From contig NIVC01001546.1 of the NCBI GenBank assembly GCA_002269645.1, forward strand, positions 207,043 to 271,042: a DNA stretch of 64,000 nucleotides. The letters are read 5' to 3'. Below the pieces are notes generated by a model that did not search any database, was not told the DNA's origin, and saw only the letters and a program-made list of their open reading frames with translations. The translations under genes and the position numbers were made by a program. Each line of letters starts with the position of its first letter. Within the stretch, counting starts at the first letter, position 1. Positions 40,690-63,791 of the stretch are shown one piece after another. Origin of the DNA: Macrostomum lignano. Lineage: Eukaryota.

Positions 40690-40888
40690 GTGCAACCTAG
40701 GGATTCACCTAACCATTTCTATTGGCAACACACACATGTAAGTCACTATTAAAGAGAATAGCAATTAATTCTTCTATTAGCCAATAGCAACTATTAATCA
40801 AATGCTCTTTTAGCCAAAGGCTTTTAGCCAATAATGATTTACATGTGTGTTGCCAATGGAAACAGCTAGGTGGTTGCCAAGGTTGCAC
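40690..40888. mobile_element. Degenerate MITE-like inverted repeat, about 200 bp
   Basis: The left arm GTGCAACCT...TTGGCAACAC..ACATGTAA pairs with the right arm over about 60 bp at roughly 75% identity. No clear TSD. Confidence 0.45.
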
Positions 40889-43706: not shown

Positions 43707-46700
43707 AGTCTATAGGAAAAAGGGGCATTTGATGCAGTTTATACCTTGGCTAGAGGTTTTACTTTTATGCTTGAACATAATTTAAAAAATAGAACAATAA
43801 AACTTAGGTTAAGTATCATAACAATAGAAATATACACCAAAAAATTGGGCAATCCTGAAGATTCCCACATTCAATTATTTTACAGAATTATTTCGCTCTC
43901 TATTCAAGGGTGGTGGGGGTGGGGGTTATAATTAAACGCGGGAATTTTCAGGATTGCCAAAAGTTGAACAAAGCAAAACTTGCAAAGTACAATATGAATA
44001 TGAGACATAAATATGGCCTTAATTAATCAATTTTGTCCAATTGACATAAACTAGATTTTAACAAGCAAACACCGACAAAAAACGACACATTGCTATAGAA
44101 AAACTACGCCCTAAATAATAGGCCTAGTCATAGTTTCGGAATAGGATGTTAGTTTAGACTTAGTGGGCCTAGGCCTACCGAGCGAGTTAACTGTTAAGTG
44201 AACGATTACAATAGTTTATTTTAATTTTAACAAGAGTGGAAGCCTGATTGGATGTTCCGAATGTTCGCGAAAGGAGTGACAGCGAACTGTTTAATTGGTT
44301 TCAATGCACGTCCGCCTGTCAGCAATACTATACTGTGCTATGACAATAAGAAGAAAAAATGTAATTAAATGTCGCGTTTAAATTTTACACTTGTTTAGAA
44401 TGGTCAAGCCAGAAATTTGGAGATTATTTATAACAAATATAGCTTTTGCCGTTAAGTTAGTGTAAAATGCATGCATGCAGTTTACTTTTCATTTTATATC
44501 TAGTGAAACATCTAAAATTTATGTTCTTTATGCTGAAAATTTGTGTTTTTAGGTAGACAAGTCGTTTTGTCTTTGTCTTGCACAAAATAAGCACACAATT
44601 GAGGACTATTTCTACTTCCCTCTTCCTAAAATAAGATCCTGAACCTTTTCCGTTCTTCTGTTCGTCCTTGGAAAACCCCGGGTGCGCGCAATTCTTGAAA
44701 TCTCCATCAGAGAGAACCCGCCCCTTGCAGTAATCTCTGCTAAGCACTTCGTCGACACTTTCTGCATCGACTTTACAGCCTTTGGAGTGGCCTTTTAATA
44801 CCCCGGAAGTAAGTAGTTTTATTAGCACTATACATGTACAGGCATTTGGACCATTGATTGCATGGCAACTCCATCGTTACTGCAGAAAGCCAAAAGTAAA
44901 ATGGTCCAAATTTTATTCAGAGAACTTAATCGCGGTAATCTGAAGGACAATTAAATAAAATGTAACACTGTGATGAGGACAGCGGTTCTAGTTAATCGCT
45001 TACATGTAATTAAGAGTCAAGATATGATTTGTAAACAACCGCGCAGCTATAGCCTTTGATCTACATGTACATGCAAGGAACCGAAATTAAGTGACGACGT
45101 CACTGCAGAGGCCTGCTATAGTGACGGAGAAGCTCAAACAAGCAGCCCCAACGTATATACACGTGTGTATACATTTACCTAGCTTGCTTGCAAAACTCAT
45201 GCACTTTACATGTATTTGTAACTACTAGCCTGCGGCTATTCTCGATCTCCCGCCGGTATTTATCTGTCGGCAGATAATTATAAAAATTAAATAATCGACC
45301 AGCCAACCTATGCCAGAAGGGCTCAAAATTTTGATTCAAAACACTCCAGCCTTTCAGACTCTCTGATTGGCTAGAAAAATATGGGGTTGCGCAACAAGTC
45401 ACGAGACAATTAAGATCGCTTACAACTTACAGAGATGCAAATGGGGTTAAAATTGTTACGCATTGTGTTATACGCATTGATTTTTTTGCTGAAAAATAAA
45501 GAAGGTCGGAATTGGGGATTAAAAGAAGTGGGGTTGTAAAGGTATGAGTCATCGACGAGTCATCACAACTTAATATTCTGCAGCTGGACGATGTGAAGTC
45601 TCGAAAATTTAAAATCGATCGCTTTTTTTGACTAAAATTGGTCAATCTGTGCCGCGCGACCCTATCTTACTACTAAAGAAAGACTACTTCATTTTTTGCT
45701 TTTTTAAAATAAATAGCGCACCTTATTCAGCAAGAAGCATTGATTGCGCACTCTGCATCGCACCGCAGAAAAAGAAAGCTGTTTGCCCACATTTCGATTT
45801 TGATTTCAGACAGTTTTTGATACAAATACGGCTTGTATTAACTTCATCTCCCGAAACTCCAAGGCCTACAGCTGTATATTGGCCGATGGTGTAGTTTTAT
45901 TTTCATAAAGAAATTGCGCAAATTGTGTACGCTTCTGAATTTGTTCAAAGAAACAATATGCAGACGGAATATTAAATTCACCTTGCTCAAAACTCACTTA
46001 CTCACCTATATGGCTAATGGCATCAATTATAGTCATCCTGCAACAGCTGTATAGAATGCATCATCACACGCTGCTCTACAAAACTCTTTCTAAAACTCAC
46101 CACAGGGACAGGTCATTCCAGTCTCAGCTCCCCATCCCACCATATATAACGCGCGTATGTGCAGACAATCCTGTACGCGCGTACATGTATTCTCAATCGT
46201 ACGTCCTCTGCCTCGACCTAAGCGCTTTTCCTAATACAACCCCCTTCATTTCCCGCTCTGTCTTCCTCAAAGCTTTCTCCCTGCTAGGCGTACACAGGTG
46301 TATATAGGGCGTCTCTCTATCCCTTGGCTAGCCAGGTATTGCCACCATGGATATCGACGGCGAGAATAATAAAGCCATGGAGTGGAGAGACGAGAGAGGA
46401 AAAGAACTGAAGAAGATTGAAATTAGGCTGGGCTGGAGCTCAGACAGACGACAGGCGGAGAGGAGCAGCAGTGTTGGCTATGGTCAGGCCATAGGAAACG
46501 CCCCTCGTTCCCTCTCGTCTTGTTCTGCTCCCCCCAAAAAAACTGGGAATCCTCTTCCCCACCTGCTCTTTCTCTCTCTCCCTCTCACCCTTTTCACCTC
46601 TCTTCCCTTCCCGTTCGCTGTCGTCTACTCATCAAGGCTCGGCGTGTACACAGACGGGCGTTTTAGACATTTCAACTCCCAGTGTACGCACTGGAAAAAA

Positions 46701-48054
46701 CAATAGAAGACTCTCCCCCCCCTAAAGAGAGGGGAACGTAGACGGGAGGGGGGGAGAGAATGAACGGAGGTTAGAGTGTTGGCAAAGAAACTCTAGAATG
46801 AAAGCGTATACGAGAGAGCAGAGCACCTGGGGGATTGGAAGGCCGCAATCCAACCAGTGAACAGTGTCCTCTCGCAATAGCGACACACATTCAGTGGTGA
46901 GTTATAGTCTGTCGGAGAGAAAGAGCCTTAAGAGAGCGATATTATAACAACTGTAGTGACTGGCTTCTAATAGTTTCCTTGCGCGTGCGACTGCATTACC
47001 ACCTAGGCTTAGTAAGTGAGCTTTCGCAAGCTCAATCAGTCTGAATTCATAATTATCCATTGAACTTAAAATTTAGTTTTTAGGCCAATGCCATTGCTAC
47101 AGACAGACTTTCTGACTGGCTGCCAACAGCTTTAGCTTACTAAATAAAAAGTAAGAAATTAAAAATTGGTTTGCTGCTTCTGCAACTTCAACCCCCCTCA
47201 CTCTCGAGAGTGCGGGCCCACCTCAGCGCAAAGCGGCAGCACTGTACACTGACGGGACAGAGGCCTTTCAACACAGCACCTACTAAATACGCAGTGTGTG
47301 CGCCAGCTCAATACCTAAATAATATACCTGAACAGAGCATAAAAGGCTACGCAAAAGAAGAAGACTGCAATTTAACAAGGGAGTGAAGACCTGGCTAGGT
47401 GAGGACGGTCTAGAATCTGTCGTTACCTGGAGCGAATAAGAACAAAGTTTATTCATCACAGACTCGGTTCTGCTTCAGTATATTGGACACGGTTCGGAGG
47501 GTCCTCGCCCGTACACGGTTGCGTAACAACTTCACTGTTTGCCTTCTATTTCCTGTCTTGTATATAGAATATGGAACCCCAGGCCGACTAAGTTTGAAGG
47601 TTGAAGCAGATTTCTGGAATACTCGCGACTCAGGTAGAGTGGCAGCCGTCATCAAGGCTTCTATAATTGCTATAATAGAGCGCAAAAATAGAGTCGTGTT
47701 TATTCTAATATCGTTTAGAATGGATCGCACAAGAGTCGGATTGCCTAACGCTGCAAGCATATTGTTAATTGCACTGCTGCTGACAACTAGCGAAATCTAC
47801 GTCACCCTGTCAGGTAAGAATCTCAGCATACCGTAATTACTTGCATATCGAAATGAAATAACTAAAGAAATGCTCGGGGACTTACTCAATCAAAGGGCAT
47901 GCTCCCCAAACAGCTGTAAGCTTTTGATTTTATACAGTCACTATTAAATTATTGGAATGAGTGAAATGAGTTTTAAAGCAAAGAAAGCTTTGGCATCAGG
48001 GCTCAACTTTAAACCATGGCTTAACCCCTACTCTCACTTTGATGCTTGGCCGAT

Positions 48055-48900
48055 CTTAACATCTCAGCAACTCCACCATGAGCCTTGACATCTCAGCAAC
48101 TCCTTGAGCCTTGACATCTCAGCAACTCCTTGAGCCTTGACATCTCAGCAACTCCTTGAGCCTTGACATCTCAGCAACTCCTCCATGAGCCTTGACATCT
48201 CAGCAACTCCATGAGCCTTGACATCTCAGCAACTCCTTGAGCCTTGACATCTCAGCAACTCCTTGAGCCTTGACATCTCAGCAACTCCTCCATGAACCTT
48301 GACATCTCAGCAACTCCCCATGAGCCTTGACATCTCAGCAACTCCTCCATGAACCTTGACATCTCAGCAACTCCTCCATGAACCTTGACATCTCAGCAAC
48401 TCCTCCATGAGCCTTGACATCTCAGCAACTCCCCATGAGCCTTGACATCTCAGCAACTCCCCATAGCCCTGACATCTCAGCAATTCCCCATGAGCCTTGA
48501 CATCTCAGCAACTCCTCCATGAGCCTTGACATCTCAGCAACTCCCCATGAGCCTTGACATCTCAGCAACTCCTCCATGAGCCTTGACATCTCAGCAACTC
48601 CCCATGAGCCTAGACATCTCAGCAAATCCCCCATGAGCCTTGACATCTCAGCAAATCCCCCATGAGCTTTGACTCTCAGCAACTCCTCCATGAGCCTTGA
48701 CATCTCAGCAAATCCCCCATGAGCCTTGACATCTCAGCAACTTCTCCATGAGCCTTGACTTCTCAGCAAATCCTGCATGAGCCTTGACTCTCAGCAACTC
48801 CTCCATGAGCCTTGACATCTCAGCAACTCCTTGAGCCTTGACATCCCAGCAACTCCCCCATGAGCCCTGACATCTCAGCAACTCCCCATGAGTTTTTAGA
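48055..48900. repeat. Minisatellite, about 29-bp unit CATGAGCCTTGACATCTCAGCAACTCCTC, intron 1 of the Ig-like gene
   Basis: Directly visible, with shorter variants. Confidence 0.95.
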
Positions 48901-50756
48901 CATCTTGGAAATTCTAACAATCCACACTCTCATGTCCAAGGACTCGTTAGACTTTGAAATTTAATTCTTAATTTTAATTTGATTTAATTTTAATTCAACC
49001 ATGACTGCGAAACCATTGAGCTATCGTTTTTTTGTGCTCCAACTAGCTGTATACATGTAGCTAGTGTTGTATAGTGTAGTATAGGCAGTGAAGAGACACC
49101 GAGAAAGAGAGTGAAAGAGGCTACTGCACTCTGTGCATGTTTTTTGAGCTGAGTCACCCACCATTTGCAAAAATGCGGGACAGTCTTCCTGCCTGCTGTT
49201 TGCGGCTCACGTACGCTTGTGAAAAGCAGTTTTTGCTACTCTGAATAATAACTCTGTGACCTGAATGAGACGAAAAAGCCCCTGCAATTATATGATTTAG
49301 GTGAATTTTTGTGATTTATTAATCCTCAACAAAATGGGCTATGGCTGGTAGACACTGTTCCTTACTACATGTGCTCAATATTGCAAAGAGGAAGGAAGTA
49401 TAGCCTCTTTGTAGGTTTAGTGTTAAGCTTAGCCAGAGAACTATACCTGAATATAATATAATCTTATTCATTGTGTCAGAGAAAGACACGTCACTTAATT
49501 CAACCAAATGTTGCGAGTAAAATTGCAAGCTTGCGTTTTGTGGTAATGCTATCCAACACGTTCTGAAGTTCGTTTTCGAGCGTAGCCACCAACAAAGATT
49601 ACAGTTAATACAGAATAGGACCTTTGTCTAAGTCAACGGTAGGCAACATTTTTACCTCAAGGGCTAGAGGAGGGATGGATGAACTCGAATAGGGGAGAAA
49701 AGAGAAGGGAGTGAATAGGAGAGAAAAGGAGATGAGAGACAGAGAGGAGAGAAGAGGAGAGGAGAGAGTGGAGAGAGGAGATTAGAGAGAACATAGCTGA
49801 GAAGAGACACAAGCCTTGAGCAGGCCAAATTGCTATTGTGAAGTTTCAAAGGGCCGGATAGAGAGGGCTCGTAAGTCGTTCTTGCTTTCGTCTTGAGAGT
49901 TGCAACACGACCCAGAAATTCTCTTACAACAATTTAGCTTTTAACCCGATCCCCCACACACAGCAGCGGCGGTACTTCAAGACACCCGAATGGCCGTCCC
50001 GAGCTCCGACCAGTCCATTAAGCTCAAAGTCGAAATCACCGACACAAAATTCCACTTGACCTGCGAAGTCACCGGCATCACCCTAGGGACCCAAAATGGA
50101 CAAATAATGCATTTTCAGAATCTAATGACAAAATAGTGCATTCTTGGTGCATTATATGTACGTGCATTTTTAATGCATTTTTAGTAAAAGTTCTATCTAC
50201 ACTATTTAACAAAATAAGCATGAATTTAGTTCAAGATTGGCTTTATTGCGCATCTGTGTATTTATAAATTATACTTCCGTTGCTAACTTTGAAGAACAAA
50301 TAATAAAACGTGGTGCGATAAAAATGCATTATTTTCTGTAACAATTATCAAATTACAAATGCATTTTTTATATCCAGCCGTAGCGAATTAGACCATCACA
50401 AATTGAAATTAAAATGGCGGTCTAATTGCGTGCTGGATTATTTTGTTGCTCGAAGCGAAATTCGTAATTAAATTTCTATTTCAGGTTCTTATCTAGCAAA
50501 CAAACTTACATTCGTACGCAAAAATTGGGTCGCTTTTGTTATTTCTCTATAACATAGCTTGTTCAATCGATTTTGATTGTCGAAATAAAAGCTTTGTTTT
50601 CTTCACTATTTTATGACATCCTCTCAACAATTTAATTGCATTAATCAATCTGGTGTGACAATTATTCCAATTTCTAATTATTCCAATTCAGTTAATATAT
50701 TATTATTATAGGTTTGAATTTATTGACTTCAGACACTAAGAGTTGGTGGATCTTGA

Positions 50757-53700
50757 ATGGATCTTGCGGCTGGTTCAAGTAGGCGCTCTTCGAATAGAGT
50801 AGTGAAACCAGTGCAACGATTGGCAAATTCTGCTGCGTCATTTTATGATTCGAAGTACCTACTATTCTTCATTCGAAAGACAAGAACTTATCATAACTTT
50901 TCCCGTGGCAGTCTTGCACTTAGCCATAATGAGCCTGATGTGAAATTCATTTTTGTAAGTAATTTTTTGCTTACTTACTAGGCCCAGGCCTAATCCTAGT
51001 AATTGTTACAAATGCTATTGCATATTGTATACAAAATTCTGCAGGATTTGAAAAAATAAATAAATTGCTTGAGTGCATATGGCTTAAAATGAATGTAGTT
51101 TTGTGTGCCTAACTATCAAATATCTATTAACTCCTACAAATATATTTATTAGGGCCTAAAGTTAAATGAAGCTAAATAGTTTTTTATATTGTTTTACTAG
51201 TAGGCTGGGCTTCTATAGCCATATGCCTAGTTTAGGCCATGTAGGGAGTAGGCCCTGATGCCCAACTATAGAACTAGTTAGGTATTTTTTAGTGAATTAG
51301 GCTTATTCTAAGATTTCATCTTTTTATAGTTTTAGTAATACTAGGCCAAGGCTGTTTAATTTGCAAAAGACTACTTTTTAGTGCTTGAAATAGGCTGTTT
51401 AGTTGCTATCAATGTTAGAGTATGATTAGCTAACTCATGCATAAAGAACTATGGTTGGTTTGGCTAGCTTTCCTTTCTTTTCTATATGTTCTCTATTCTA
51501 AGTATAGAGAGAATATATTGGGCTGTTAGGAAAATTCTGTCCGTTTTGACTAAAATATGTTGGAGCGAGTTTTTATAGGAATGCAGCAGTGTTACTCAGT
51601 AAAATAATTGCCATCGCAATCGATGACCCTCTGCCAACGAGAGGGCAGACTTTGGATGCCAGCTCTGTAGAAATCCTTGGGCTGTGATTCAAAAAAGTTA
51701 GTAATGCAGTCCTTGACCCCTTTGTCATCTTCAAACGTTTTCTCTTTCAGATGATGGTGCAGCGCTCGAAAAAGATGGTAGTCTGTAGGGGCCAGATCGG
51801 GGCTGTACGGTGGGTGGGGCAGCACTTCCCAGCCCAGATCCAGCAGCTTTTGTCGGGTCAAATTGGCGGTGTGCGGCCGAGCGTTGTCATGAAGGAAGCG
51901 AACATGCTGACGCCCTGGACGCTGTGTGTGGAGGCAGTCGGCCACATTCTGCAGCTGGTTACAGTAGAGCTCGGCGGTGATGCTGGTGTTGGGCGGCAGC
52001 AGCTCGAAGTATACAACTCCTTCACTGTCCTACCAACAGCAGAGCATCACCTTCTTAGGGTGCAGTGGGGCCTTTGGCTCTGGCTGTGGCGGTTTGCCGG
52101 CATCAACCCACTGGCGCTTGCAGTGTATATTAACGTACATCACCCACTTCTCATCGCCAGTGAGTATTGAGGCCAGCCAGTCTGTTGTTCTCTTGTAGGA
52201 GAGCAGTGAGGTGCAAATGTCTGCTCGGCTTTGACGGTCCCTGTCAGTCAGGTCATGGGGGTCCACTGTCCGAGCTTGCTTTTCTTGCCCATGGCAGCCA
52301 GGTGTTCAGCGACTTGCACATGGGAGCACCCAAGAGTGGCTGCCAGCTCTCGTGTAGTCTGGTGCGGATTGGCCTCCACAAGTGTCCGCAGCAGCTCAGT
52401 GTCTATCTCAGATGGGCGTCCAGGGCGAGGTTCGTCAGCAAGGCTGTAGTCGCCGCTGCGAAAGCGATCAAACCAACGACGGGCTGTGCGGTCAGAGACA
52501 GCATCCTGGCCAAATGCACTGCACAGGCGTCGAGTCGATTCGGCTGCTGTAATACCTGCTAGAAAATCATATAGCATGCACTGCCTTAGAGCGATGCTGT
52601 TTAATTCAAAATTTCTGGCCATAATTGGGCGCTGAAAAGCAAATGACTTGGTTAGAATGACCACAACTCTGGCTGTATATGCATACACAAGTATTGGATC
52701 CAACACAGCTTCATGATCCTCTGCATAGAAAAATAAAAAACGGACAGAACTTTCCTAACAACCCAATAGAATTTTGGCCATTTTTAAATGTCTTATTGTC
52801 TATTTTTTTAATATATATTTTGTATAATGTATTCATTTTCAAACTTGACTGCCTTCATTGATTTTTATAACATTTTATATAGTGGTCTCAGTATGTTTAT
52901 ATATCTATTTATCTATGAGCTATTTTATTCCTATGCTAAGCCTAAGGTGTTCAATTCATAGGAAGGTCTATTTGCTGATAAGGTAGGCCCTATATTCTAT
53001 CCAATAGCAAGTTTACTATTTGAACTATTGTCCAGTGCTTTAGTTTTCTATTTTAATATTTCTTATACTTTTAGTTTTCCTAGTATTTTAATAGGCTATA
53101 TTTGCCAACTCTATTAAGCTATCTAAAGTTTTATTTTAGTTAAGTTTGTCTATTTTTCCAATGGATTTATTCTCTTTAGCTTGTCTATCTTTCTAAAGGA
53201 CTCTTTTGTTTAGTTTGTCTAACTTTCTAATAGGCTATATCTATTTTGTTAACTATTCTAAAAAGAATTTTCTATTTAGTTTGTTTATAATTCTTAATTA
53301 AAAAATTAATTTGGTCTAATATTAGCTCAAAATCTAATAATGAATCACATTTTTATTTTAGGGTGAGGACTACCCACTTGCTCTCAAGGATGGCATTTTC
53401 AATGGCATGTTCATTGCAGCTGAACCATGGTCAAAAATGATCTACCTTGAGAAGGAGCTTGATGCATTCATAACTGAAAACAAGGAGAACTCCGAGCTCT
53501 CTGATCATGTCCAGTCTCATATGAAAGTCTTCATGAGACAACAAGAAGACTCAAGTGATGAAGATGCAGGTGATATTGACGATTCGGATGATGATGAGAC
53601 CTGGCAGCCTACTCCGCCTCCTACTCAGGTTTCTTTTGTAAGCCCAAGTCCAGTTTCGACACCTACAGCTGCTCATTCTCGTGCTAGGAAGCAATCTCAA

Positions 53701-54905
53701 GGCAGTCTAGCAAACAAGCGGCCAAGGACAGCTGGTACTCATGTTGAAGACAGACACCAAAATTCTGAGGCATCATTGGCTTTAATTGCAAGTGAGGAAC
53801 AGCGTGCCTTACCACCGGAACTACTTCCTCAAGTTCTTCAGGCTCATGAATCAGCAAAGGCAGCAAGTGCAAACGATCCCACAAATTCCAAGCCTCTCAC
53901 ACTGGCTGAATTTCAGGAAGGAATGGGTAAGGTTTAATTATTTCTTTCTTGTGCTTTTGTTTTTATGCTTTATTCTCATTATCTCAGTGTAATACAACTT
54001 TTTTACTCACAAATCCTGCATTTCGTGCTGCTTATGTAATCACTATCAGTATAGTACAAATGTGAAACACCAAATGTTTCAGACAGTTTGAAGCGGTTCA
54101 TCGCTCACAAACTGAGGAAGATTCGCACTTCATCATCCAGCTTGCATCAAATGGTATCAGCTGATTTCCTTAAGGAGGTAGGTTTCTCAGTTTCTGTGCA
54201 AATTAATTTACTTTCTTTACTAACCATTTACTATAAAATTATTATATGCTTTACTTTGCCATTTTACTTTACTGTTTTTCTTATTTTTCGCTCTTCTTCA
54301 TGTGGCTTGACGTTTTCACATTTCACTGACATTTATCATGACATAATCCAAACAATCGGTCCTGAGTACCAATTTTCTTTGTACTTTTTCGTAGGAATTT
54401 GAAGGCCACGATGGGCGAGTTTGCAATTTCTCAGATCTGCCTCGTACAACGACGTCGAAGTTCATCAGGGCATATGCTTCTGCGAGGTATGGCGTCGAGT
54501 ATGTGCAATCGCATGTTTTCGGAGAGTACAAAGGCACGACACAAAGGCCAAAGGCTCCAGGAGAAGTGCAAGACCATCTTAAGAGTAAGCGATACAATTT
54601 CTTTGCAACTGAATGTTTTTTGGCAACTGACTTAGTATTGTGGGCATTAGATGGATGCAGGTCATTCTATATAGTCTTTTAAAGCTAAAAATTCAAACTG
54701 GCTCACTGTAGCCATTCCATTGTTGGAAAATGTTTGTGTGAATTTGCTGCTACTATAAAATCTTTCTTAAAAAAAACTAGGCATTCTGAACAAGGCCTTC
54801 AATATCCCGAGGGATCAAACGGTTTCTGCGTGGACAGCCGTCAAAGACTCTCTGAATCGACTTGGTCCAGAGTCAACCTTCCGCAAGCGAAAGGCCGGTG
54901 ATTAG
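50757..54905 (+). CDS. CACTA accessory protein, about 390 aa, C-terminal BEN-like domain; exons 50757-50954, 53362-53926, 54083-54177, 54395-54584, 54781-54905
   Basis: Four GT-AG introns with matching phases 0, 1, 0, 1 give a continuous 1173-nt frame. Acidic/Ser-Pro linker. The C-terminal FIRAYASARYG..YVQSHVFG...LKSIL...W..VKDSLNR follows the BEN/DUF4806 helical pattern. Terminal RKRK may be an NLS. Confidence 0.8.
51518..52766 (-). mobile_element. Mariner element, 1,249 bp, inserted in intron 1 of the CACTA accessory gene
   Basis: 30-bp TIR TTGGG(C/T)TGTTAGGAAA(A/G)TTCTGTCCGTTTT (28/30) with TA TSD on both sides (51516-17, 52767-68). Confidence 0.95.
51592..52622 (-). pseudogene. Mariner DD34D transposase pseudogene
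   Basis: Motifs RRWFDRF, GRP, W(T/V)PHDL, TGDEKW, HDNARPH and YSPDLAPTD, with 34 aa between the last two Asp. Lesions: a 1-nt deletion in a C5 run (52257-61) and TGG>TAG at 52032-30. Confidence 0.93.
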
Positions 54906-55365
54906 ACTGACGGCTAAACGTGTGTCGCAATATTTTAACTGAAGATGCAATCACCCAACTGCCATTCGACATGTAACAAACTATAACGTTTTTGAACTGA
55001 ATCGATCCCTATTTTACGTTATCTGCGCTAAAGTCAAACTCTTACTCTGTAGTGTTTTTTTAATATAAAATGAAGCGACTACCTTAATTATTTTTTTAGA
55101 ATAATAACTGTTGCGTTTGAAAAGTGTTGGCACTCTTTGTATGGGTAGTTAGGATACCCTTAATGATTTCCGTAGTCGTTCAAAATGTATATATGTGGAA
55201 GAATCTAAACTCCTTCAACTTTAACGCCACCGAGCTAATTTATTCCACTTCATTTCATATTTATCGATAGATGATGGTGCACATTCTTATTTCGATGGCA
55301 CGGGTACGTAATTTTCTCCAAACTTTTCAGTCTATCCTAACACTCGTAGAACTGAAGTTGAAATT

Positions 55366-57762
55366 ATGAGTTCGTCGTCGGAAAGTCTGTCCTCTGGGTC
55401 GTCGGAAAGTCTGTCCTCTGGGTCGTCGGAAAGTCTGTCCTCTGGGTCGTCATATGTCTCGATGTCGGTTGATTCAAGTACACATTCGATTGACACATCC
55501 ATGGGTGAATACAGCGATTCGAGCTCTTCCGCTGCAATTCAAGCAAACGTCGGCGAGCAACCGACTATTGCAATTCCTGCTGATGACGAGAATGAAGTGC
55601 AGGCAGCTGGTCCATCTGATATCGAGCACCCTGAAATATTTTCTGCGGATGAGGATAGTAACCTTCTTTCTGTCTTTTGTATCCAAGGTATCTCTATGGA
55701 GGTCAAATGTGCCCTTCTAATGTTGTGGATGATCTTGTCGAACGTTTCCAAGAAAGCTGTTAAAAACATGCTTCGCCTCATTTCCATTCTGTCTCCTCGC
55801 GCTGCTTTACCTACATCTTACAAAGCAATGGAAGCGGTTCTGCTTCGTTCATTCATTTTAAAACCGGACTTCGTTGTGAAAGTTTGTTTAGCGTGTCTAC
55901 TTATAAACTGTAGTGAACATCCAGTCGACTCTTTCGAGGGACTATGGCTCTTAAATGTAAACCATCAGGTGGAGCTTACAGTTGAAAGGCATTTAAATGA
56001 TATTTTATCTTACCAGCGTGAGCTAAGGCGAGGATTTCAAACTGACATTCTGAACTCTGCTGTTAGCAATGAACTAGAAACCGGCTCATCTCCTGACATT
56101 TTTCACTTGTATTTTCTTCTTTCGGCTGACGGAGCAAACTTCTTTAAAGTTTCTGAAATGTCTGTGTGGCCTTTCTGTGCACTGTGCCTCAATTTGCCTG
56201 TTAGATTACGCCAGAAGTTTGTCAACATTATCACAATCGCTTTGTTTACCAATCGAGGAAAGCCGAATTTTGAAAAGTTTTTGCCTACTATTTTAAATCG
56301 CTTGCCTTCGTGTGTAAAAGTAAGGAATGTGACGTTTTTTCTTCACTTCTCGTTTTTTACCTGCGATTTGCCCGCTTTATCTCACCTTTTTGGAATCAAG
56401 CAATTCAACGGACAATTTGCTTGTCCCAGATGCATCCTACCTGGCAAGTCTCTAAAGGTGTCAGAAAAAGGCCAAGTTCGTGTCTTCCCCGCTGTCCATG
56501 GAATTCCGCTTCGAACTAATGCCATGCATGCGCAGCATCTCACAGTTCTCAAGGCTCAAGGGCTTAAGGATTATTTTGGAATCAAACGCGAAACTGCTCT
56601 TCTCAAAATCATTCGTTTTCCAGAAAATTTCATTGTTGATTCTATGCATTGTCTCTGGGAAGGTCAAGTAAAACACATTCTAGCCTTCTTGACTGATTCT
56701 AAGACTAAAAGCTGCAATCCCAATCATTACCGTGTGCTAGGCTCAGCATCTGTCAATGTAATCGACTCTCAGATTATGCAACTGAAACTTCCCCAAGGTA
56801 TTAGCAATGTTCCTCCAATTAGTCAGCTCTCACTTTGGAAAGCGAAAACATACAAGATTTTTGCTCTGTATCTGTTTCCATCAATTCTGCTTCCACGAAT
56901 CGAAAATCCCGAACTTAGGGGCCTGCTCCTTCTTCTTAATTCTATTTATAACTTGCTGTACTCGCAAAATTCTTGTGTTTCAACTTTAAAACGTCTGTGC
57001 AATATGTTTCTTAACCTGTGTCCTGAGTTTTTTGGCGAACGTGTTATGCTTCTTAATTTTCATCTTCTCTATCATCTACCCGACCAGTATGAACGATTTG
57101 GTCCTCTGTATTGTGCATCAATGTTTCCCTTTGAGTCAGCTATGCATGGCTTTAATATGCTTCATTTTGGCAGTCGATTTCATGGAAAGCAAATTTCCGA
57201 AAAGTTTTTCTGGCTAAAAGTGCTATTGTATTCACTGCAACCTGCTGCAGGCTCCAATCCCTCAATTTCTGATGCACTCCTTGTCATCGCTAAGCACTAC
57301 TGCAATCCTCCTGAGCGCGAAAATCGAACTCTAGGCGCTTCTGGGGGTAAAATTTTAACAACCACTTCTGCGGATTGCACTTTAAAAACATGTAGTTCGT
57401 ATGTCCTGGATGTATCAAATTCATATTTTGCTATTAATCATTTTGCCGATAGCAAAATCTTTGGCTCTTTTCTGACTCCACAATGTCGTTTAATCGACTT
57501 ACTGTTCAATGCTGTTCCGGATTTTACCAATATTGGTGCTAGTGCATCTGAACAAGCAATCTTTCTTGCTTTTTTTACATCTGATGTTCCACTCCGAAAT
57601 ATGCTTATCTTTACGAGTCAGGAACCCACTCGGGAAAATTACAATTGCATACGTCTCACTGATGTGGCTGCGAGGTGCATTCGAGTCGATGTCAACTTTC
57701 CGAACTTGCCATCAGGCAGTTTTTGTCTGGTACCCCTGTTGGAAGAGTGTGAGCACGATTAG
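55366..57762 (+). CDS. CACTA/EnSpm-type transposase (Tnp2/Transposase_21-like), 798 aa, intact
   Basis: Motifs SADG..FK....SVWP....LNLP..LR, CDLPA, NGQFACPRC, DSMH...EG..K and H.L.HL.....FGPL...SMFPFES. The N-terminus has a 24-bp repeat x3 (SSESLSSG). Confidence 0.92.
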   Translation: MSSSSESLSSGSSESLSSGSSESLSSGSSYVSMSVDSSTHSIDTSMGEYSDSSSSAAIQANVGEQPTIAIPADDENEVQAAGPSDIEHPEIFSADEDSNLLSVFCIQGISMEVKCALLMLWMILSNVSKKAVKNMLRLISILSPRAALPTSYKAMEAVLLRSFILKPDFVVKVCLACLLINCSEHPVDSFEGLWLLNVNHQVELTVERHLNDILSYQRELRRGFQTDILNSAVSNELETGSSPDIFHLYFLLSADGANFFKVSEMSVWPFCALCLNLPVRLRQKFVNIITIALFTNRGKPNFEKFLPTILNRLPSCVKVRNVTFFLHFSFFTCDLPALSHLFGIKQFNGQFACPRCILPGKSLKVSEKGQVRVFPAVHGIPLRTNAMHAQHLTVLKAQGLKDYFGIKRETALLKIIRFPENFIVDSMHCLWEGQVKHILAFLTDSKTKSCNPNHYRVLGSASVNVIDSQIMQLKLPQGISNVPPISQLSLWKAKTYKIFALYLFPSILLPRIENPELRGLLLLLNSIYNLLYSQNSCVSTLKRLCNMFLNLCPEFFGERVMLLNFHLLYHLPDQYERFGPLYCASMFPFESAMHGFNMLHFGSRFHGKQISEKFFWLKVLLYSLQPAAGSNPSISDALLVIAKHYCNPPERENRTLGASGGKILTTTSADCTLKTCSSYVLDVSNSYFAINHFADSKIFGSFLTPQCRLIDLLFNAVPDFTNIGASASEQAIFLAFFTSDVPLRNMLIFTSQEPTRENYNCIRLTDVAARCIRVDVNFPNLPSGSFCLVPLLEECEHD

Positions 57763-59859
57763 CTCAGATAACTTCAAACGCGCGTCAGTTTTTCAGGGTC
57801 ATTGTCTTGTCTCGTTTTCTATTCTGTAAGTAGTCCTGGTTGTCAATGTAATCATTGCATGAAATTTTTTCTGGTACGTATTCCTGATTTATCTGCTGGG
57901 TAGCTATTGTTGTGTAGCTTTTGTCGATGTTAGCCAGCCGATGTGTGTGTGCTAGGCTTATTCTAAAAGCTCTATTGCTAGGACACAGGAAGAAAATATG
58001 ACTGGGGAATTAGACGGGACCAAGAAAGAGACACTAACTGGCAAACTTTCGGCTAGCAAACGCCGGCTGGCTAACATCGTAGACCCAGTACCATCTAGTA
58101 CTTGTACTTAAGCAAGCTTTGTTTCTTGTTAGTTTTTCTAAACTAAAAAGCCCTTTTTCACAAAACATGCGCGCCTAATGCTCAGCTATATTTATCCTAC
58201 ATGTTATGTTTTACGTTTTCTCTCATATGCCGTGCGCTTTGTTTAGATACACCTAATTCTTTGTCACATTTTTGCAGTTTTTTATGTTTAATTGCTTTTA
58301 CGTAAAACTCCGGGGACACAAATTTTTTTTTTACATTTGGCTTCTTTGTTTGGTAATAAATATTACATTTTCGGCTCACTCACTTAGTTGAGACCTGTCT
58401 TATACATAAAACTAACCAATTGTGTTATTTTGAGTGTGTCTTATTGTGTGTACATCGCCCATGGTTTGGTAAGACAAACCAGAATAGAACTAAGTACGGT
58501 TTTAATGAGCCGATTTAAACGAAGGTACGAAGTGCAATGTATTCATATATATACGAGTATATATGGCTCGCAAGATGACTAAAAATGCATTATTTCTAAT
58601 TAATTGCAACCACATTATAAATGCATTTTATATATATAGAATTTGCATTATAATGGCAATTATAATGCCATTAAGTGGCAATTATAATGCCATTAAGTGG
58701 CATTCAATGTCATTATAATGGCCAGTAAAAATGCATTATTTACCCATTATGGGTCCCTAGGGCAACGGTCCAGTAGACGATCAGAAGATCCGATTCTTCT
58801 GTCCGGCAATCGAAAAACTCGGAGATCCCTGCTTCTCAGACTGCAATCCGCATTGCTCGATGAGTTCTGACAAATGCCTACTAGCCCACCCGGTGCTGAA
58901 CAGCTCCGTCCGGTGCAAAGAGTCCAAACCGTTTCCCGGTGCCAAATTCATCGACCTGTATTTCGACAACAGTCAGGCCGAACTAGCTGGCGAATGGTAC
59001 TGCCGGTTCCAGACTGCGATCAGCTCGAAAACGTCAATTAGCAGGAGAGAAAAAAATCCACCTGCTGTCCTGGCAACTACGGCAGCTCCGCAGATCAGCG
59101 CGGCCACGAAGAAGCCGGTGCCGCAGCCGGTGCCCACCAATCCGCCGCCTGTTGTGGTGCTACCGCCAACAAGTGAGACACTCAGGCTCTGGCATAGTAC
59201 TCAAATTATCTAGGGAACATCCCTTAGTGTAATTGAAACTTTTTAAAGAATAGTGAAAACATTGCAATCTCATTTGAAACTTTCTTATCTTCACCAAAAT
59301 TGCATCTTGGTTAATCTTTCCGGTACAATATTTTATTAGTCTCGCACTTGGCGCTTGTCACTTCGCAGAATACCTGGCATACTCAGCCAGGTGGGTTGAA
59401 TAGGGTGACACTAAAATAGATAAAATAAAGCACAATTAAATAAAGAATGAAGAGAGCAGCATACTGGAGTGTCAGTGAGTGCTTGAGAGTGTAGTCACTA
59501 CAATGAGAAAAGACCCACATCGGACTATATAGATGCTCGTTGATATTACTGCCGCCTACGCACGAACCTTGCTTGTATTTTCAGTTCAATATTTTGTAGT
59601 TTGAAATGACAAATGACACAATATTTCCTTCTAATTTTCAGGGCCACCCATATCGAATGGTGGCTTGCCCGACTCGACAACAAATACTGAAGCTGTTGAT
59701 AAAACGACAAGTTACGATTCTAGGTGTAAGTGTTAATTACATAGTTGTGGTACTACATAAGACAGATGAAAAAGAGTATAATGATCAAAAAGCAAGGTAG
59801 AGAGCGTATGGAGAGGTAGAGAGATCAGAGCTCAGAGAGATACAGATCTAACAGAGAGA

Positions 59860-60968
59860 AGTAGAGAGCTCACAGAGAGAGGTAGAGGGCTCACAGAGAG
59901 GTAGAGAGCTTACAGAGAGAGGTAGAGGGCTCACAGAGAGAGAGGTAGGGAGCTCATAGAGAGAGAGCTAGGGAGCTCATAGAGAGAGAGGTAGGGAGCT
60001 CATAGAGGGAGAGGTAGAGAGCTCACAGAGAGAGAGGGGTAGAGAGCTCACAGAGAGAGAGAGAGGTAGAGAGCTCACAGAGAGAGAGAGGTAGAGAGCT
60101 CACAGAGAGAGAGAGAGGTAGAGAGCTTACAGAGAGAGGTAGAGGGCTCACAGAGAGAGGTAGAGGGCTCACAGAGAGAGGTAGAGGGCTCACACAGAGA
60201 GAGAGGTAGAGAGCTCACAAAGAGAGGTAGAGGGCTCACAGAGAGAGGTAGAGGGCTCACAGAGAGAGGTAGAGGGCTCACAGAGAGAGGTAGAGGGCTC
60301 ACAGAGAGAGAGAGGTAGAGAGCTTACAGAGAGAGAGGGTAGAGAGCTCACAGAGAGAGAGAGAGGTAGAGAGCTCACAGAGAGAGAGAGGTAGAGAGCT
60401 CACAGAGAGAGAGAGGTAGAGAGCTTACAGAGAGAGGTAGAGGGCTCACAGAGAGAGGTAGAGGGCTCACAGAGAGAGGTAGAGGGCTCACAGAGAGAGA
60501 GAGGTAGAGAGCTCACAAAGAGAGGTAGAGGGCTCACAGAGAGAGGTAGAGGGCTCACAGAGAGAGGTAGAGGGCTCACAGAGAGAGGTAGAGGGCTCAC
60601 AGAGAGAGAGAGGTAGAGAGCTTACAGAGAGAGGTAGAGGGCTCACAGAGAGAGGTAGAGGGCTCACAGAGAGAGGTAGAGGGCTCACAGAGAGAGGTAG
60701 AGGGCTCACAGAGAGAGGTAGAGGGCTCACAGAGAGAGGTAGAGGGCTCACAGAGAGAGGTAGAGGGCTCACAGAGAGAGGTAGAGGGCTCACAGAGAGA
60801 GAGGTAGAGAGCTCACAGAGAGAGGTAGAGAGCTTACAGAGAGAGGTAGAGAGCTTACAGAGAGAGGTAGAGGGCTCACAGAGAGAGGTAGAGGGCTCAC
60901 AGAGAGAGGTAGAGGGCTCACAGAGAGAGAGGTAGAGGTAGAGAGCTCACAGAGAGAGGTAGAGAGCT

Positions 60969-61050
<82 letters not shown>

Positions 61051-63265
61051 GAGAGAGGTAGAGAGCTCACAGAGAGAGAGAGGTAGAGAGCTCACAGAGA
61101 GAGAGAGAGAGAGAGAGGTAGAGAGCTCACAGAGAGAGAGAGGTAGAGAGCTCACAGAGAGAGAGAGAGGTAGAGAGCTCACAGAGAGAGAGAGAGGTAG
61201 AGAGCTCACAGAGAGAGAGAGAGGTAGAGAGCTCACAGAGAGAGACAGAGAGAGAGAGAGAGGGGTATAGAGAGCTCACAGAGGTAGAGAGCTCACAAAG
61301 AGGTAGAAAGCTCACAAAAGAGGTAGAGAGCTCATAGAGAGAGGTAGAGAGCTCACAGAGAAAGGTAGAGAGCTCATAGAGAGAGGTAGAGAGCTCACAG
61401 AGAGAGGTAGAGAGCTCATAGAGAGAGGTAGAGAGCTCACAGAGAGAGGTAGAGAGCTCATAGAGAGAGGTAGAGAGCTCACAGAGAGAGGTAGAGAGCT
61501 CATAGAGAGAGGTAGAGAGCTCACAGAGAGAGGTAGAGAGCTCACAGAGAGAGGTAGAGAGCTCACAGAGAGAGGTAGAGGGCTCACAGAGAGAGGTAGA
61601 GAGCTCACAGAGAAAGGTAGAGAGCTCACAGAGAGAGGTAGAGAGCTCACAGAGAGAGGTAGAGAGCTCACAGAGAGAGGTAGAGGGCTCACAGAGTGAG
61701 GTAGAGAGCTCATAGAGAGAGGTAGAGAGCTCACAGAGAGAGGTAGAGAGCTCACAGAGAAAGGTAGAGGGCTCACAGAGAGAGAGAGAGGTAGAGAGCT
61801 CACAGAGAGAGAGAGGTAGAGAGCTCACAGAGAGAGAGAGGTAGAGAGCTTACAGAGAGAGGTAGAGGGCTCACAGAGAGAGGTAGAGGGCTCACAGAGA
61901 GAGGTAGAGGGCTCACAGAGAGAGAGAGAGGTAGAGAGCTCACAAAGAGAGGTAGAGGGCTCACAGAGAGAGGTAGAGGGCTCACAGAGAGAGGTAGAGG
62001 GCTCACAGAGAGAGGTAGAGGGCTCACAGAGAGAGAGAGGTAGAGAGCTTACAGAGAGAGGTAGAGGGCTCACAGAGAGAGGTAGAGGGCTCACAGAGAG
62101 AGGTAGAGGGCTCACAGAGAGAGGTAGAGGGCTCACAGAGAGAGGTAGAGGGCTCACAGAGAGAGGTAGAGGGCTCACAGAGAGAGGTAGAGGGCTCACA
62201 GAGAGAGGTAGAGGGCTCACAGAGAGAGAGGTAGAGAGCTCACAGAGAGAGGTAGAGAGCTTACAGAGAGAGGTAGAGAGCTTACAGAGAGAGGTAGAGG
62301 GCTCACAGAGAGAGGTAGAGGGCTCACAGAGAAAGGTAGAGGGCTCACAGAGAGAGAGGTAGAGGTAGAGAGCTCACAGAGAGAGGTAGAGAGCTCACAG
62401 AGAGAGAGAGAGAGAGAGAGGTAGAGAGCTCACAGAGAGAGAGAGGTAGAGAGCTCACAGAGAGAGAGAGAGGTAGAGAGCTCACAGAGAGAGAGAGAGG
62501 TAGAGAGCTCACAGAGAGAGAGAGAGAGGTAGAGAGCTCACAGAGAGAGACAGAGAGAGAGAGAGAGGGGTATAGAGAGCTCACAGAGGTAGAGAGCTCA
62601 CAAAGAGGTAGAAAGCTCACAAAAGAGGTAGAGAGCTCATAGAGAGAGGTAGAAAGCTCACAGAGAAAGGTAGAGAGCTCATAGAGAGAGGTAGAGAGCT
62701 CACAGAGAGAGGTAGAGAGCTCATAGAGAGAGGTAGAGAGCTCACAGAGAGAGGTAGAGAACTCATAGAGAGAGGTAGAGAGCTCACAGAGAGAGGTAGA
62801 GAGCTCATAGAGAGAGGTAGAGAGCTCACAGAGAGAGGTAGAGAGCTCACAGAGAGAGGTAGAGAGCTCACAGAGAGAGGTAGAGGGCTCACAGAGAGAG
62901 GTAGAGAGCTCACAGAGAAAGGTAGAGAGCTCACAGAGAGAGGTAGAGAGCTCACAGAGAGAGGTAGAGAGCTCACAGAGAGAGTAGAGGGCTCACAGAG
63001 AGAGGTAGAGAGCTCATAGAGAGAGGTAGAGAGCTCACAGAGAGAGGTAGAGAGCTCACAGAGAAAGGTAGAGGGCTCACAGAGAGAGGTAGAGAGCTCA
63101 TAGAGAGAGGTAGAGAGCTCATAGAGAGAGGTAGAGAGCTCACAGAGAGAGGTAGAGAGCTCACAGAGAAAGGTAGAGGGCTCACAGAGAGAGGTAGAGA
63201 GCTCACAGAGAAAGGTAGAGAGCTCACAGAGAGAGGTAGAGAGCTCACAGAGAGAGGTAGAGAGC
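59860..63265. repeat. GA-rich minisatellite, about 21-bp unit AGAGAGAGGTAGAG(A/G)GCTCAC, about 3.4 kb, intron 2 of the Ig-like gene
   Basis: Directly visible, with variable (GA)n spacers. Confidence 0.97.
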
Positions 63266-63275
63266 ATACATATCA

Positions 63276-63791
<516 letters not shown>

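What the first reader, a model, noticed from the sequence alone, without database searches (positions are those of the whole stretch)
50079..58764. Recent autonomous CACTA insertion knocks out the Ig-like exon
Seen: the insertion falls inside codon AAC (ATC A^AC GGT) and duplicates CA. Read-through ends at TAG 50134-36, leaving a short secreted fragment. Both exon halves and the TM exon remain stop-free, and the transposase ORF is intact. Inference: a young, possibly polymorphic or still active insertion. Imprecise excision could generate new receptor alleles.
Basis: partly seen in the sequence, partly recalled or inferred. Interest (0 to 1): 0.75.

Follow-up and report, generated by a model that had tools for sequence, protein, structure and literature searches.

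The report
Young RAG1-like transposon in flatworm ORF
An 8.7-kb cut-and-paste DNA transposon of the CACTA/Mirage/Chapaev supergroup, from a very young and probably still mobile family in the flatworm Macrostomum lignano, has landed in a long open reading frame that looks like an exon of an uncharacterised membrane-protein gene; this is an ordinary though clean case, and the "Ig-like receptor" label is not supported.

Summary
An 8,682-bp element (50081-58762) has 35-nt terminal inverted repeats and a 2-bp CA target-site duplication. It splits a 194-codon stop-free frame, and read-through stops at TAG 50134-36.

The window is Macrostomum lignano. Eight other copies read from assembly GCA_002269645.1 lie at different loci, each with its own perfect 2-bp duplication. 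The nine sequences differ at only 4 positions. Two paralogous blocks show the matching empty sites.

The 798-aa transposase is intact:
- It matches Pfam DUF1258, and its relatives match Transposase_21 and DUF4218.
- Its model resembles RAG1, ProtoRAG and Transib.

So it belongs to the CMC supergroup, but it is not a canonical CACTA element: the ends read CCCTAGGG and the duplication is 2 bp, not 3.

"Ig-like exon" is unsupported. I found no homologue, Pfam hit or PDB hit, and the structure model was unusable. However, a hand-built four-exon model is coherent: signal peptide, Cys-rich exon, Ser/Thr-rich stalk, transmembrane segment, all junctions phase 1. The hit is therefore probably a real exon (about 60%).

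The empty allele at this locus could not be retrieved. Because the duplication is 2 bp, simple excision would leave a frameshift.

The parts
50079..50080 (.). Left copy of the 2-bp target-site duplication (CA)
   Evidence: All 8 other sequenced copies of the family also have a perfect 2-bp duplication of their own dinucleotide.
50081..50115 (+). Left terminal inverted repeat, starting CCCTAGGGACCCA
   Evidence: I1: 35 nt, 91% complementary; exact 13-mer at both ends only.
50106..50365 (.). Left subterminal region with 4 copies of the palindromic motif AATGCATT. Likely transposase or accessory-protein binding sites (inferred).
   Evidence: 7 of the window's 10 AATGCATT sites lie in the two subterminal regions; 1.7 expected by chance in the whole window.
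51518..52766 (-). Nested, dead mariner element (1,249 bp, 32-nt inverted repeats, TA duplication at 51516-17 and 52767-68). It is carried by every copy of the host element.
   Evidence: (I2). Pfam HTH_48 E=1.8e-20 and DDE_3. One in-frame stop in all copies, plus a G-run frameshift in the window copy.
53422..54905 (+). Second gene of the element (ORF1): annotated 304-aa spliced product with an acidic, Ser-rich N-terminus and no recognisable domain. An in-frame ATG lies at 53407.
   Evidence: Gene calls at the same position in L001, L002 and L004-L008; L003 has a shorter 171-aa call starting at the same position. No Pfam hit. I could not reconstruct the exact exon structure.
55366..57762 (+). 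Transposase, 798 aa, intact. DDE triad D255/D334/E590, C353-x2-C356, H566-x3-H570.
   Evidence: ORF. (DUF1258, E=8e-14, above the curated cut-off). (5,006 relatives). (relatives hit Transposase_21 and DUF4218). (invariant columns). (AF2 pLDDT 79, pTM 0.82; best PDB matches RAG1 core E=3e-11, BbRAGL, HzTransib).
58584..58737 (.). Right subterminal region: 3 AATGCATT motifs and a 22-bp tandem repeat (58646-58702)
58728..58762 (-). Right terminal inverted repeat, ending GGGTCCCTAGGG
58763..58764 (.). Right copy of the 2-bp target-site duplication (CA)
47720..47813 (+). Putative host exon 1: ATG plus a signal-peptide-like sequence (MDRTRVGLPNAASILLIALLLTTSE...), donor CAG|GTAAGA, phase 1. Inferred model with no transcript evidence.
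49964..50080 (+). Putative host exon 2, left part (acceptor ...cacacag|CAG). It ends at the insertion.
   Evidence: In phase with exon 1.
58765..59172 (+). Putative host exon 2, right part: Cys-rich segment, then a Pro-rich stalk; donor CAA|GTGAGA, phase 1
59642..59725 (+). Putative host exon 3: Ser/Thr-rich stalk; acceptor ttctaattttcag|G, donor GGT|GTAAGT, phase 1
63336..63449 (+). Putative host exon 4: transmembrane segment [19 protein letters not shown] followed by [10 protein letters not shown]. Either the donor TCT|GTGAGT is used, or translation reads through to the stop at 63497-99.

Best explanation
Positions 50081-58762 are one copy of a very young, apparently autonomous cut-and-paste DNA transposon of Macrostomum lignano. 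[quoted passage not shown]

**Contents of the element.** It encodes an intact 798-aa DDE transposase with a RAG1-like fold and a second spliced gene of unknown function. It also carries a dead mariner as a passenger.

**How it moves.**
- Shown: the ends are 35-nt inverted repeats beginning CCCTAGGG.
- Shown: clustered subterminal AATGCATT motifs lie just inside both ends.
- Shown (9 of 9 sequenced copies and two empty paralogous sites): integration duplicates exactly 2 bp of target, with no strict sequence preference.
- Inferred: the transposase recognises these ends and motifs.
- Inferred from the RAG1/Transib structural match and the conserved DDE, C(2)C and H(3)H residues: excision proceeds by nicking and then hairpin formation on the flanking DNA. 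The donor site is then repaired by end joining and keeps a footprint.

**What it hit.**
- Shown: this copy inserted between the first and second base of an AAC codon of a 194-codon open frame, in the same orientation as that frame. The frame now ends 19 codons into the element.
- Inferred, about 60%: the frame is exon 2 of an unannotated orphan gene for a type-I membrane protein (signal peptide, Cys-rich ectodomain, Pro/Ser/Thr stalk, TM). If so, this allele is a null.
- Not shown: that the ectodomain is Ig-like.
For: **Organism.** The transposase's 90% cluster contains a Macrostomum lignano GenBank protein, PAA55061.1. A cyclin-L exon in the window is 100% identical to a M. lignano UniRef entry.

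**Family.** Eight further copies in GCA_002269645.1 are 99.97-99.99% identical over 8.68 kb. They lie at different loci, each with its own 2-bp duplication. Only 4 positions vary among the nine sequences.

**Empty sites.** Paralogous blocks L017 and L019 have flanks 93-95% identical to those of the L004 and L003 copies. Each carries the dinucleotide once.

**Transposase.**
- DUF1258 hit above the curated cut-off.
- 5,006 relatives in the representative library. Sampled relatives also hit Transposase_21 (Tnp2) and DUF4218.
- Invariant D255, D334, C353, C356, H566, H570 and E590. This is the CMC signature described in PMC12730594.
- AF2 model with pLDDT 79.4 and pTM 0.82. Its 44 PDB matches at E<=0.001 are all RAG1, BbRAGL or HzTransib.
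- Same start (MSS...) and end (...EHD) as paralogue P0006.

**Expression.** Both element genes are in the GenBank annotation. That annotation is RNA-seq-derived and excludes transcripts overlapping annotated repeats.

**Related family.** A second M. lignano family, with a transposase 35% identical, has CCCTACTCTC termini and a 2-bp duplication in 7 of 7 copies.

**Host ORF.**
- 194 stop-free codons, p about 0.006 by local shuffling.
- A four-exon model with canonical GT/AG sites, all junctions phase 1, giving signal peptide + TM architecture.
Against: **On classification**
- The termini are CCC...GGG. The literature'-CAC...GTG-3' 'invariable' for Chapaev and CACTA and 5'-CA..TG-3' usual for the wider clade.
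- The window protein itself does not reach Pfam Transposase_21 or DUF4218.

**On mobility**
- No transposition event was observed. Near-identity of copies and RNA-seq-based gene models are indirect evidence.
- The M. lignano assembly is redundant. This cannot explain nine different flanks.

**On the host gene**
- No homologue or annotated protein in 5.8 billion sequences. That absence is weak evidence: the bona fide cyclin-L exon nearby matched only a 126-aa partial entry.
- The codon-usage score is no better than intergenic DNA: -0.007 against a null of 0.00 +/- 0.09.
- No Pfam, PDB or structural support.
Confidence: 0.85

Rival explanations
1. One reading: a canonical CACTA (En/Spm-type) element has knocked out an immunoglobulin-like exon of a receptor. 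This leaves a short secreted fragment, and imprecise excision could create new receptor alleles.
For: - Superfamily-level kinship with En/Spm TnpD-type transposases.
- Subterminal repeats and a second gene, as in CACTA elements.
- The motif pattern LTCEVTG...GEWYCRF.
- Signal-peptide-like and TM-like exons in phase.
- Read-through stop confirmed.
Against: - The termini are not CACTA, and the duplication is 2 bp, not 3.
- No Ig-clan Pfam hit even at E<=10, no PDB sequence hit, no homologue, and AF2 pLDDT 33.
- The Cys-Cys spacing is 86 residues with six intervening cysteines, which is atypical for Ig domains.
- A 2-bp duplication left behind by excision would shift the frame rather than create in-frame alleles.
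Confidence: 0.1
2. The element inserted into non-coding, satellite-flanked DNA. The 194-codon open frame and the four-exon model are fortuitous, and no gene was disrupted.
For: - No annotated or homologous protein anywhere.
- Codon-usage score indistinguishable from intergenic DNA, with an opposite-strand frame scoring as well.
- The locus is bracketed by AG-rich low complexity and by 29-bp and 21-bp minisatellites.
- The ORF was picked after the fact in a 64-kb window.
Against: - An ORF this long is rare under local composition: 10-14 of 2,000 shuffles.
- Most other non-repetitive ORFs of 150 codons or more in the window look like real exons.
- There are three consecutive phase-compatible junctions with consensus splice sites. 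The resulting order, signal peptide then ectodomain then stalk then TM then basic/Cys juxtamembrane, is biologically coherent.
- GC3 > GC1 > GC2, as in most of the training genes.
Confidence: 0.35
3. The nine near-identical sequenced copies reflect segmental duplication, assembly redundancy of a polyploid genome, or a dead relic, and not recent transposition of an autonomous element.
For: The M. lignano assembly is highly redundant, and about 85% of the genome is present in three paralogous copies. One copy (L006) has a 'similar place not shown'.
Against: - Nine different flanking sequences and neighbouring genes, with similarity ending exactly at the inverted-repeat tips.
- A different 2-bp duplication at each copy.
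- Paralogous blocks 93-95% identical in the flanks lack the element, while the element copies are more than 99.96% identical. The insertions therefore postdate the divergence of the paralogues.
- The ORFs are intact.
Confidence: 0.03
4. It is a piggyBac-like element. I considered this because the ends start CCCTAG..., like piggyBac's CCCTAGAAAG (recalled from memory).
For: Only the first six terminal bases.
Against: - None of the 9 sequenced insertions has a TTAA target.
- The transposase hits DUF1258, and its relatives hit Tnp2 and DUF4218 rather than the piggyBac family.
- The fold matches RAG1 and Transib.
Confidence: 0.01

Closest known systems
CMC (CACTA/En-Spm - Mirage - Chapaev) supergroup of DDE cut-and-paste transposons (Yuan & Wessler 2011, as summarised in PMC12730594 and PMC4079192)
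   Same: [quoted passage not shown]
- Short 2-bp duplication, within the reported 2-4(5) bp range.
- Relatives carry Pfam Transposase_21 and DUF4218.
- Subterminal repeats and a second gene, as in plant En/Spm.
   Different: - Termini read CCCTA...TAGGG, not CAC(TA)...GTG.
- The window protein reaches only DUF1258, not Transposase_21.
- The second gene has no similarity to TnpA or to anything else.
Mirage subgroup (Caenorhabditis elements; Pfam DUF1258 is built on Caenorhabditis proteins; this link and the 2-bp Mirage duplication are from my memory of Repbase, not tested)
   Same: DUF1258 is the only Pfam family the transposase reaches (E=8e-14). The duplication is 2 bp.
   Different: No phylogeny with Repbase Mirage consensus proteins could be made. 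Host phylum is Platyhelminthes. I could not check Mirage termini.
Animal CACTA elements with 2-bp duplications (ENS1_Cis of Ciona savignyi and the CMC-NA MITEs, PMC6004678)
   Same: Animal CMC elements that create a 2-bp duplication.
   Different: Those have the invariable 5'-CAC...GTG-3' ends. This family and its M. lignano sister family start CCCTA.
RAG1 / ProtoRAG (BbRAGL) / Transib transposases
   Same: Overall fold of the catalytic core: Foldseek E=3e-11 to 2.7e-5, about 600 aligned columns, TM 0.41-0.64 normalised to the target. They share the DDE, C(2)C and H(3-4)H layout.
   Different: Only 11-15% sequence identity. A 2-bp rather than 5-bp duplication. No RAG2-like partner seen. No RSS-like heptamer/nonamer ends.

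Membership tests
CMC supergroup (CACTA/Mirage/Chapaev) | DDE catalytic triad | tested here: met
   D255, D334 and E590 are invariant in a 35-sequence alignment of relatives.
CMC supergroup (CACTA/Mirage/Chapaev) | [quoted passage not shown] | tested here: met
   C353-x2-C356 and H566-x3-H570 are invariant. Definition taken.
CMC supergroup (CACTA/Mirage/Chapaev) | Target-site duplication of 2-4 bp | tested here: met
   2 bp in 9 of 9 sequenced copies, in 7 of 7 copies of the sister family, and at two empty sites.
CMC supergroup (CACTA/Mirage/Chapaev) | Termini 5'-CAC...GTG-3' (5'-CA..TG-3' in most of the wider clade) | tested here: not met
   Termini are CCCTAGGG...CCCTAGGG. The sister family has CCCTACTC...GAGTAGGG.
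CMC supergroup (CACTA/Mirage/Chapaev) | Phylogenetic placement among reference CMC transposases | not testable with these tools
   No Repbase or RepeatPeps library was available. Indirect support: relatives hit Transposase_21 and DUF4218, and the fold matches RAG1 and Transib.
CACTA / En-Spm in the strict sense | CACTA terminal pentanucleotide | tested here: not met
CACTA / En-Spm in the strict sense | 3-bp target-site duplication | tested here: not met
   2 bp in every copy. The third bases differ: TCA against CAA in the window.
CACTA / En-Spm in the strict sense | Subterminal repeat arrays and two genes (TnpA-like and TnpD-like) | tested here: inconclusive
   AATGCATT occurs 7 times in the subterminal regions, and a second spliced gene is present. 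That gene has no similarity to TnpA or to any Pfam family.
Mirage | Transposase similarity to the Caenorhabditis Mirage/DUF1258 proteins | tested here: met
   DUF1258 E=8e-14, 52.2 bits against a cut-off of 33.1. That DUF1258 corresponds to Mirage is from memory.
piggyBac | TTAA target-site duplication and a piggyBac-type transposase | tested here: not met
Immunoglobulin superfamily (host ORF) | Profile match to an Ig-clan domain | tested here: not met
   No Pfam family at E<=10. No PDB sequence match apart from a proline-rich chance hit.
Immunoglobulin superfamily (host ORF) | Beta-sandwich fold with a Cys...Trp...Cys core | tested here: inconclusive
   The single-sequence AF2 model has pLDDT 33.5. 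Cys spacing is 86 residues, with no conserved Trp at the usual position. No homologues were available to build an alignment.

The most novel reading that the evidence does not exclude
This family is a currently mobile, endogenous, RAG1-fold transposon of the laboratory flatworm Macrostomum lignano. With its sister family it would define a distinct CMC lineage marked by CCCTA termini and a 2-bp duplication. It escaped the published repeat annotation, and its genes are filed as host genes. The insertion in this window would then be a line-specific or segregating null allele of an orphan membrane-protein gene. The element could serve as a native tool for transposon tagging or transgenesis.
Probability: 0.4. 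Interest if true: 0.45.

Novelty: new member of a known kind. Interest (0 to 1): 0.3.

Why it matters
**For M. lignano.** This is the only flatworm with stable transgenesis, and there the heterologous Minos transposon did not give transposase-mediated integration while piggyBac worked at modest frequency. An endogenous, intact, transcribed cut-and-paste element with a known end structure is a practical lead for insertional mutagenesis. It is also a caution for genome stability between lab lines.

**For transposon biology.** The family adds a clean, full-length animal CMC element with unusual CCCTA ends and a RAG1-like predicted fold. That is useful for comparing end recognition and target-cut spacing (2 bp against 5 bp) across the CMC/Transib/RAG1 clade.

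**For the gene.** The disruption is of local interest only unless the orphan gene proves real and functional.

**For annotation.** The element's two genes are currently filed as host genes in GenBank.

Tried and rejected
- **First transposase homologue search**. It returned only 2 hits, probably because the Ser-rich N-terminus swamped the word index. The exhaustive representative search without the N-terminus found 5,006 relatives.
- **Host-ORF checks.** All were negative or unusable: homologue search at E<=10, Pfam, PDB sequences and single-sequence AlphaFold. The codon-usage log-odds test, trained on about 1,950 M. lignano codons, gave no signal. The training set is small.
- **Reaching the paralogous or empty copy of the window's own locus.**
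  - I searched with the neighbouring cyclin-L exon. The only M. lignano hit is a UniRef-only fragment with no contig on record.
  - Even in the window's own layout, a 10-kb flank from cyclin L would stop about 300 bp short of the site.
  - An exact-match scan of JGI metagenome contigs for the 26-nt empty-site junction found nothing, as expected.
  - None of the collections searchable by DNA pattern holds eukaryotic genomes.
- **Window's origin.** The window's own locus is not among the 8 loci fetched of the 9 contigs that carry the transposase in GCA_002269645.1. I cannot tell whether it is unannotated there or absent there.
- **ORF1 splicing**. One or two GT-AG introns gave only an implausible solution, so the exon structure is left open. 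ORF1 fragments have no Pfam hit.
- **L008's empty site.** It could not be placed because that copy sits inside a tandem array.
- **piggyBac.** Considered because of the CCCTAG ends and rejected (see rivals).
- **Yuan & Wessler 2011.** The paper is not held. CMC criteria were taken from papers that cite it.
Full report
**1. Observation**

- The left flank ends ...ACCGGCATCA at 50080.
- The element runs from CCCTAGGGACCCAAAATGG (50081) to CCATTATGGGTCCCTAGGG (58762).
- The right flank starts CAACGGTCCAG.

The inverted-repeat scan gives arms 50081-50115 and 58728-58762: 35 nt, 91% complementary, the longest pair in the region. CA is present on both sides, at 50079-80 and 58763-64.

Removing the element and one CA restores GGC ATC AAC GGT inside a frame that is stop-free for 194 codons. 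Reading into the element instead gives ...TGITLGTQNGQIMHFQNLMTK and then TAG at 50134-36. An ATG-initiated 798-codon ORF lies at 55366-57762.

**2. Organism and family**

The transposase's 90% identity cluster contains GenBank protein PAA55061.1 of Macrostomum lignano. A cyclin-L exon elsewhere in the window is 100% identical to a M. lignano UniRef entry. The window is therefore from this free-living flatworm.

Exact-protein look-ups listed nine contigs of assembly GCA_002269645.1 (Mlig_3_7) that carry the transposase. I fetched eight of them.
- In all eight, the similarity to the window begins and ends exactly at the inverted-repeat tips.
- Each copy is 99.97-99.99% identical over 8.68 kb.
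- The flanking DNA and neighbouring genes differ in every case.
- Each copy has its own perfect dinucleotide duplication: TA, AA, CG, GT, TT, TT, AT, CA.

An alignment of the nine sequences (window plus eight) has only four variable positions. One is a G-run length. Another is a 1-bp deletion that truncates the transposase of one copy, L008.

For two copies I reached paralogous blocks through neighbouring genes. The flanks are 93-95% identical, the element is absent, and the dinucleotide is present once. Published work says about 85% of this genome exists in three paralogous copies. The insertions are therefore much younger than the divergence of those paralogues. None of the eight fetched loci is the window's own locus.

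**3. Anatomy of the element**

- **Subterminal motifs.** Inside the inverted repeats, the palindromic octamer AATGCATT occurs four times in the first 285 bp and three times in the last 180 bp. That is seven of the window's ten sites, against 1.7 expected by chance. The right end also has a 22-bp tandem repeat.
- **Nested mariner.** At 51518-52766 sits a 1,249-bp mariner with 32-nt inverted repeats and a TA duplication. It has Mos1-type HTH and DDE_3 remnants. It carries an in-frame stop in every copy, plus a G-run frameshift in the window copy. Every copy of the large element carries it, so it was acquired before the burst and does not block mobility.
- **Second gene.** The GenBank annotation calls a spliced gene at window 53422-54905, with a 304-aa product at seven of the eight fetched copies and a shorter 171-aa call at L003. 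It has no detectable domain.
- **Expression.** That annotation is derived from RNA-seq assemblies and excluded transcripts overlapping annotated repeats. The family is therefore transcribed, and it escaped the published repeat annotation.

**4. The transposase**

- Pfam gives only DUF1258 (E=8e-14, above the curated cut-off).
- An exhaustive HMMER search found 5,006 relatives. Sampled relatives also match Transposase_21 (the Tnp2/En-Spm TnpD family) and DUF4218.
- In a 35-sequence alignment the invariant residues are D255, D334, C353, C356, H428, H566, H570 and E590. [quoted passage not shown]
- With that alignment AlphaFold gives pLDDT 79.4 and pTM 0.82; the Ser-rich first 100 residues are disordered.
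- Foldseek against the PDB returns RAG1 core structures (E down to 3e-11, about 600 aligned columns), amphioxus BbRAGL and HzTransib as all 44 matches at E<=0.001.
- The protein starts (MSS...) and ends (...EHD) like its 766-aa M. lignano paralogue P0006, so it is full length.

**5. Classification**

The element belongs to the CMC supergroup on catalytic signature, relatives, fold and duplication length. The literature gives 2-4 bp, or up to 5 bp for the wider clade. Animal CACTA elements with 2-bp duplications are already known.

It fails two defining features of CACTA in the strict sense. The ends are CCCTAGGG, not CACTA, and the literature calls CAC...GTG 'invariable'. The duplication is 2 bp, not 3.

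A second M. lignano family, with a transposase 35% identical, has CCCTACTCTC...GAGAGTAGGG ends and a 2-bp duplication in 7 of 7 copies. CCCTA ends plus a 2-bp duplication therefore characterise this lineage and are not an oddity of one family.

The DUF1258 match and the 2-bp duplication point to the Mirage subgroup. That link rests on my memory of Repbase and could not be tested.

**6. Mechanism**

- Shown: precise integration with a 2-bp staggered target cut, no strict target sequence, and intact catalytic residues.
- Inferred from the RAG1/Transib structural kinship: excision by nick and hairpin formation on the flanking DNA, followed by end joining that leaves a footprint.
- Consequence: the duplication is 2 bp, so an excision that keeps both copies adds 2 nt and shifts the frame. 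Only precise loss, or a footprint that is a multiple of three, would restore the frame.

**7. What was hit**

The 'Ig-like' label has no support.
- No protein among 5.8 billion resembles the joined ORF.
- No Pfam family matches at E<=10.
- There is no PDB sequence match beyond a proline-rich chance hit.
- The single-sequence AlphaFold model is unusable at pLDDT 33.
- A small codon-usage test is neutral.
- The two 'Ig' cysteines are 86 residues apart with six cysteines between them.

The absence from annotation is weak evidence, because even the neighbouring bona fide cyclin-L exon is represented only by a 126-aa fragment.

Other evidence favours a real exon. The ORF is unusually long for its composition: 10-14 of 2,000 shuffles reach 194 codons. 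I could also assemble a coherent model with consensus splice sites and three phase-1 junctions:

| Exon | Coordinates | Content |
|---|---|---|
| 1 | 47720-47813 | ATG plus MDRTRVGLPNAASILLIALLLTTSE, signal-peptide-like |
| 2 | 49964-50080 + 58765-59172 | Cys-rich segment, then Pro-rich; interrupted by the element |
| 3 | 59642-59725 | Ser/Thr-rich |
| 4 | 63336-63449 | [19 protein letters not shown] + CIRCC, TM with juxtamembrane residues |

This is a type-I membrane protein layout. I put the probability that a real exon was disrupted at about 0.6. If it was, the filled allele encodes the signal peptide plus 57 residues, so 'short secreted fragment' is plausible, though nonsense-mediated decay is as likely. 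Both are inference.

**8. Not testable here**

The empty allele at this locus, polymorphism and somatic excision could not be tested. None of the collections searchable by DNA pattern holds eukaryotic genomes. The paralogous blocks of this locus could not be reached through any annotated neighbour. A metagenome scan for the junction was empty.

**9. Verdict**

This is a new member of a known kind, with unusual CCCTA ends. Interest is modest. Its main value is as a candidate endogenous mobile element and tool in a flatworm model, and as a correction to the genome annotation.

Noticed in passing
window 51518-52766 (minus strand): A dead mariner (TA duplication, 32-nt inverted repeats, Mos1-type HTH, one in-frame stop) is nested in the large element. 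It is present in all nine sequenced copies, so it was a passenger picked up before the family's burst. The window, L004, L006 and L008 copies also lack one G in a G-run at 52256, which may be a homopolymer sequencing error.
   Followed up: yes
L009-L016 (for example L010 6864-13521): A second M. lignano CMC family: transposase P0006, 766 aa, 35% identical, about 6.66 kb. Termini are CCCTACTCTC...GAGAGTAGGG, with a 2-bp duplication in 7 of 7 copies. The L009 and L013 copies carry extra nested insertions of 2.4-3.3 kb. The right-end region varies in length between copies.
   Followed up: partly
L017 ~17056-17057 and L019 ~12171-12172: Paralogous blocks with flanks 93-95% identical lack the element and carry the target dinucleotide once. 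These are clean empty sites for the L004 and L003 copies.
   Followed up: yes
L008 (copy in NIVC01002814.1), position equivalent to window 57310: This copy has a 1-bp deletion in the transposase, annotated as the 666-aa partial protein PAA55061.1. It sits inside a tandem repeat array. It is the only sequenced copy with a damaged transposase.
   Followed up: partly
window 53422-54905 and 55345-57762; GenBank annotation of GCA_002269645.1: The element's two genes are annotated as ordinary host genes (BOX15_Mlig... 'hypothetical protein'). The GenBank set excludes transcripts overlapping annotated repeats, so the family evidently escaped the published repeat library.
   Followed up: partly
window 31835-39768 (minus strand): A cyclin-L gene: cyclin box, RS-rich C-terminal exon, and 60-68% identity to animal cyclin L1/L2 in the N-terminal exon. 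Its M. lignano entry in the protein collection is only a 126-aa fragment.
   Followed up: partly
window 48055-48892; 59811-63265; 63582-63768; 9760-12273; 17561-18244; 25715-27481; 6530-7205; 14403-15011: The window is rich in minisatellites: 29-bp, 21/42-bp and 9-bp units, and arrays that translate as GTHFSAS or SIYL repeats. They generate very long spurious ORFs. The 3.4-kb 21-bp array lies in the putative intron 3 of the host gene model.
   Followed up: no
window 40000-44000: A markedly AT-rich stretch (27-30% GC against about 44% elsewhere) lies between cyclin L and the putative host gene. I did not examine its nature.
   Followed up: no
window 23169-27982 (minus strand): Three long non-repetitive ORFs (183, 220 and 150 aa; Ser/Ala/Pro-rich) look like exons of another gene on the minus strand. 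One intron appears to hold the SIYL minisatellite.
   Followed up: no
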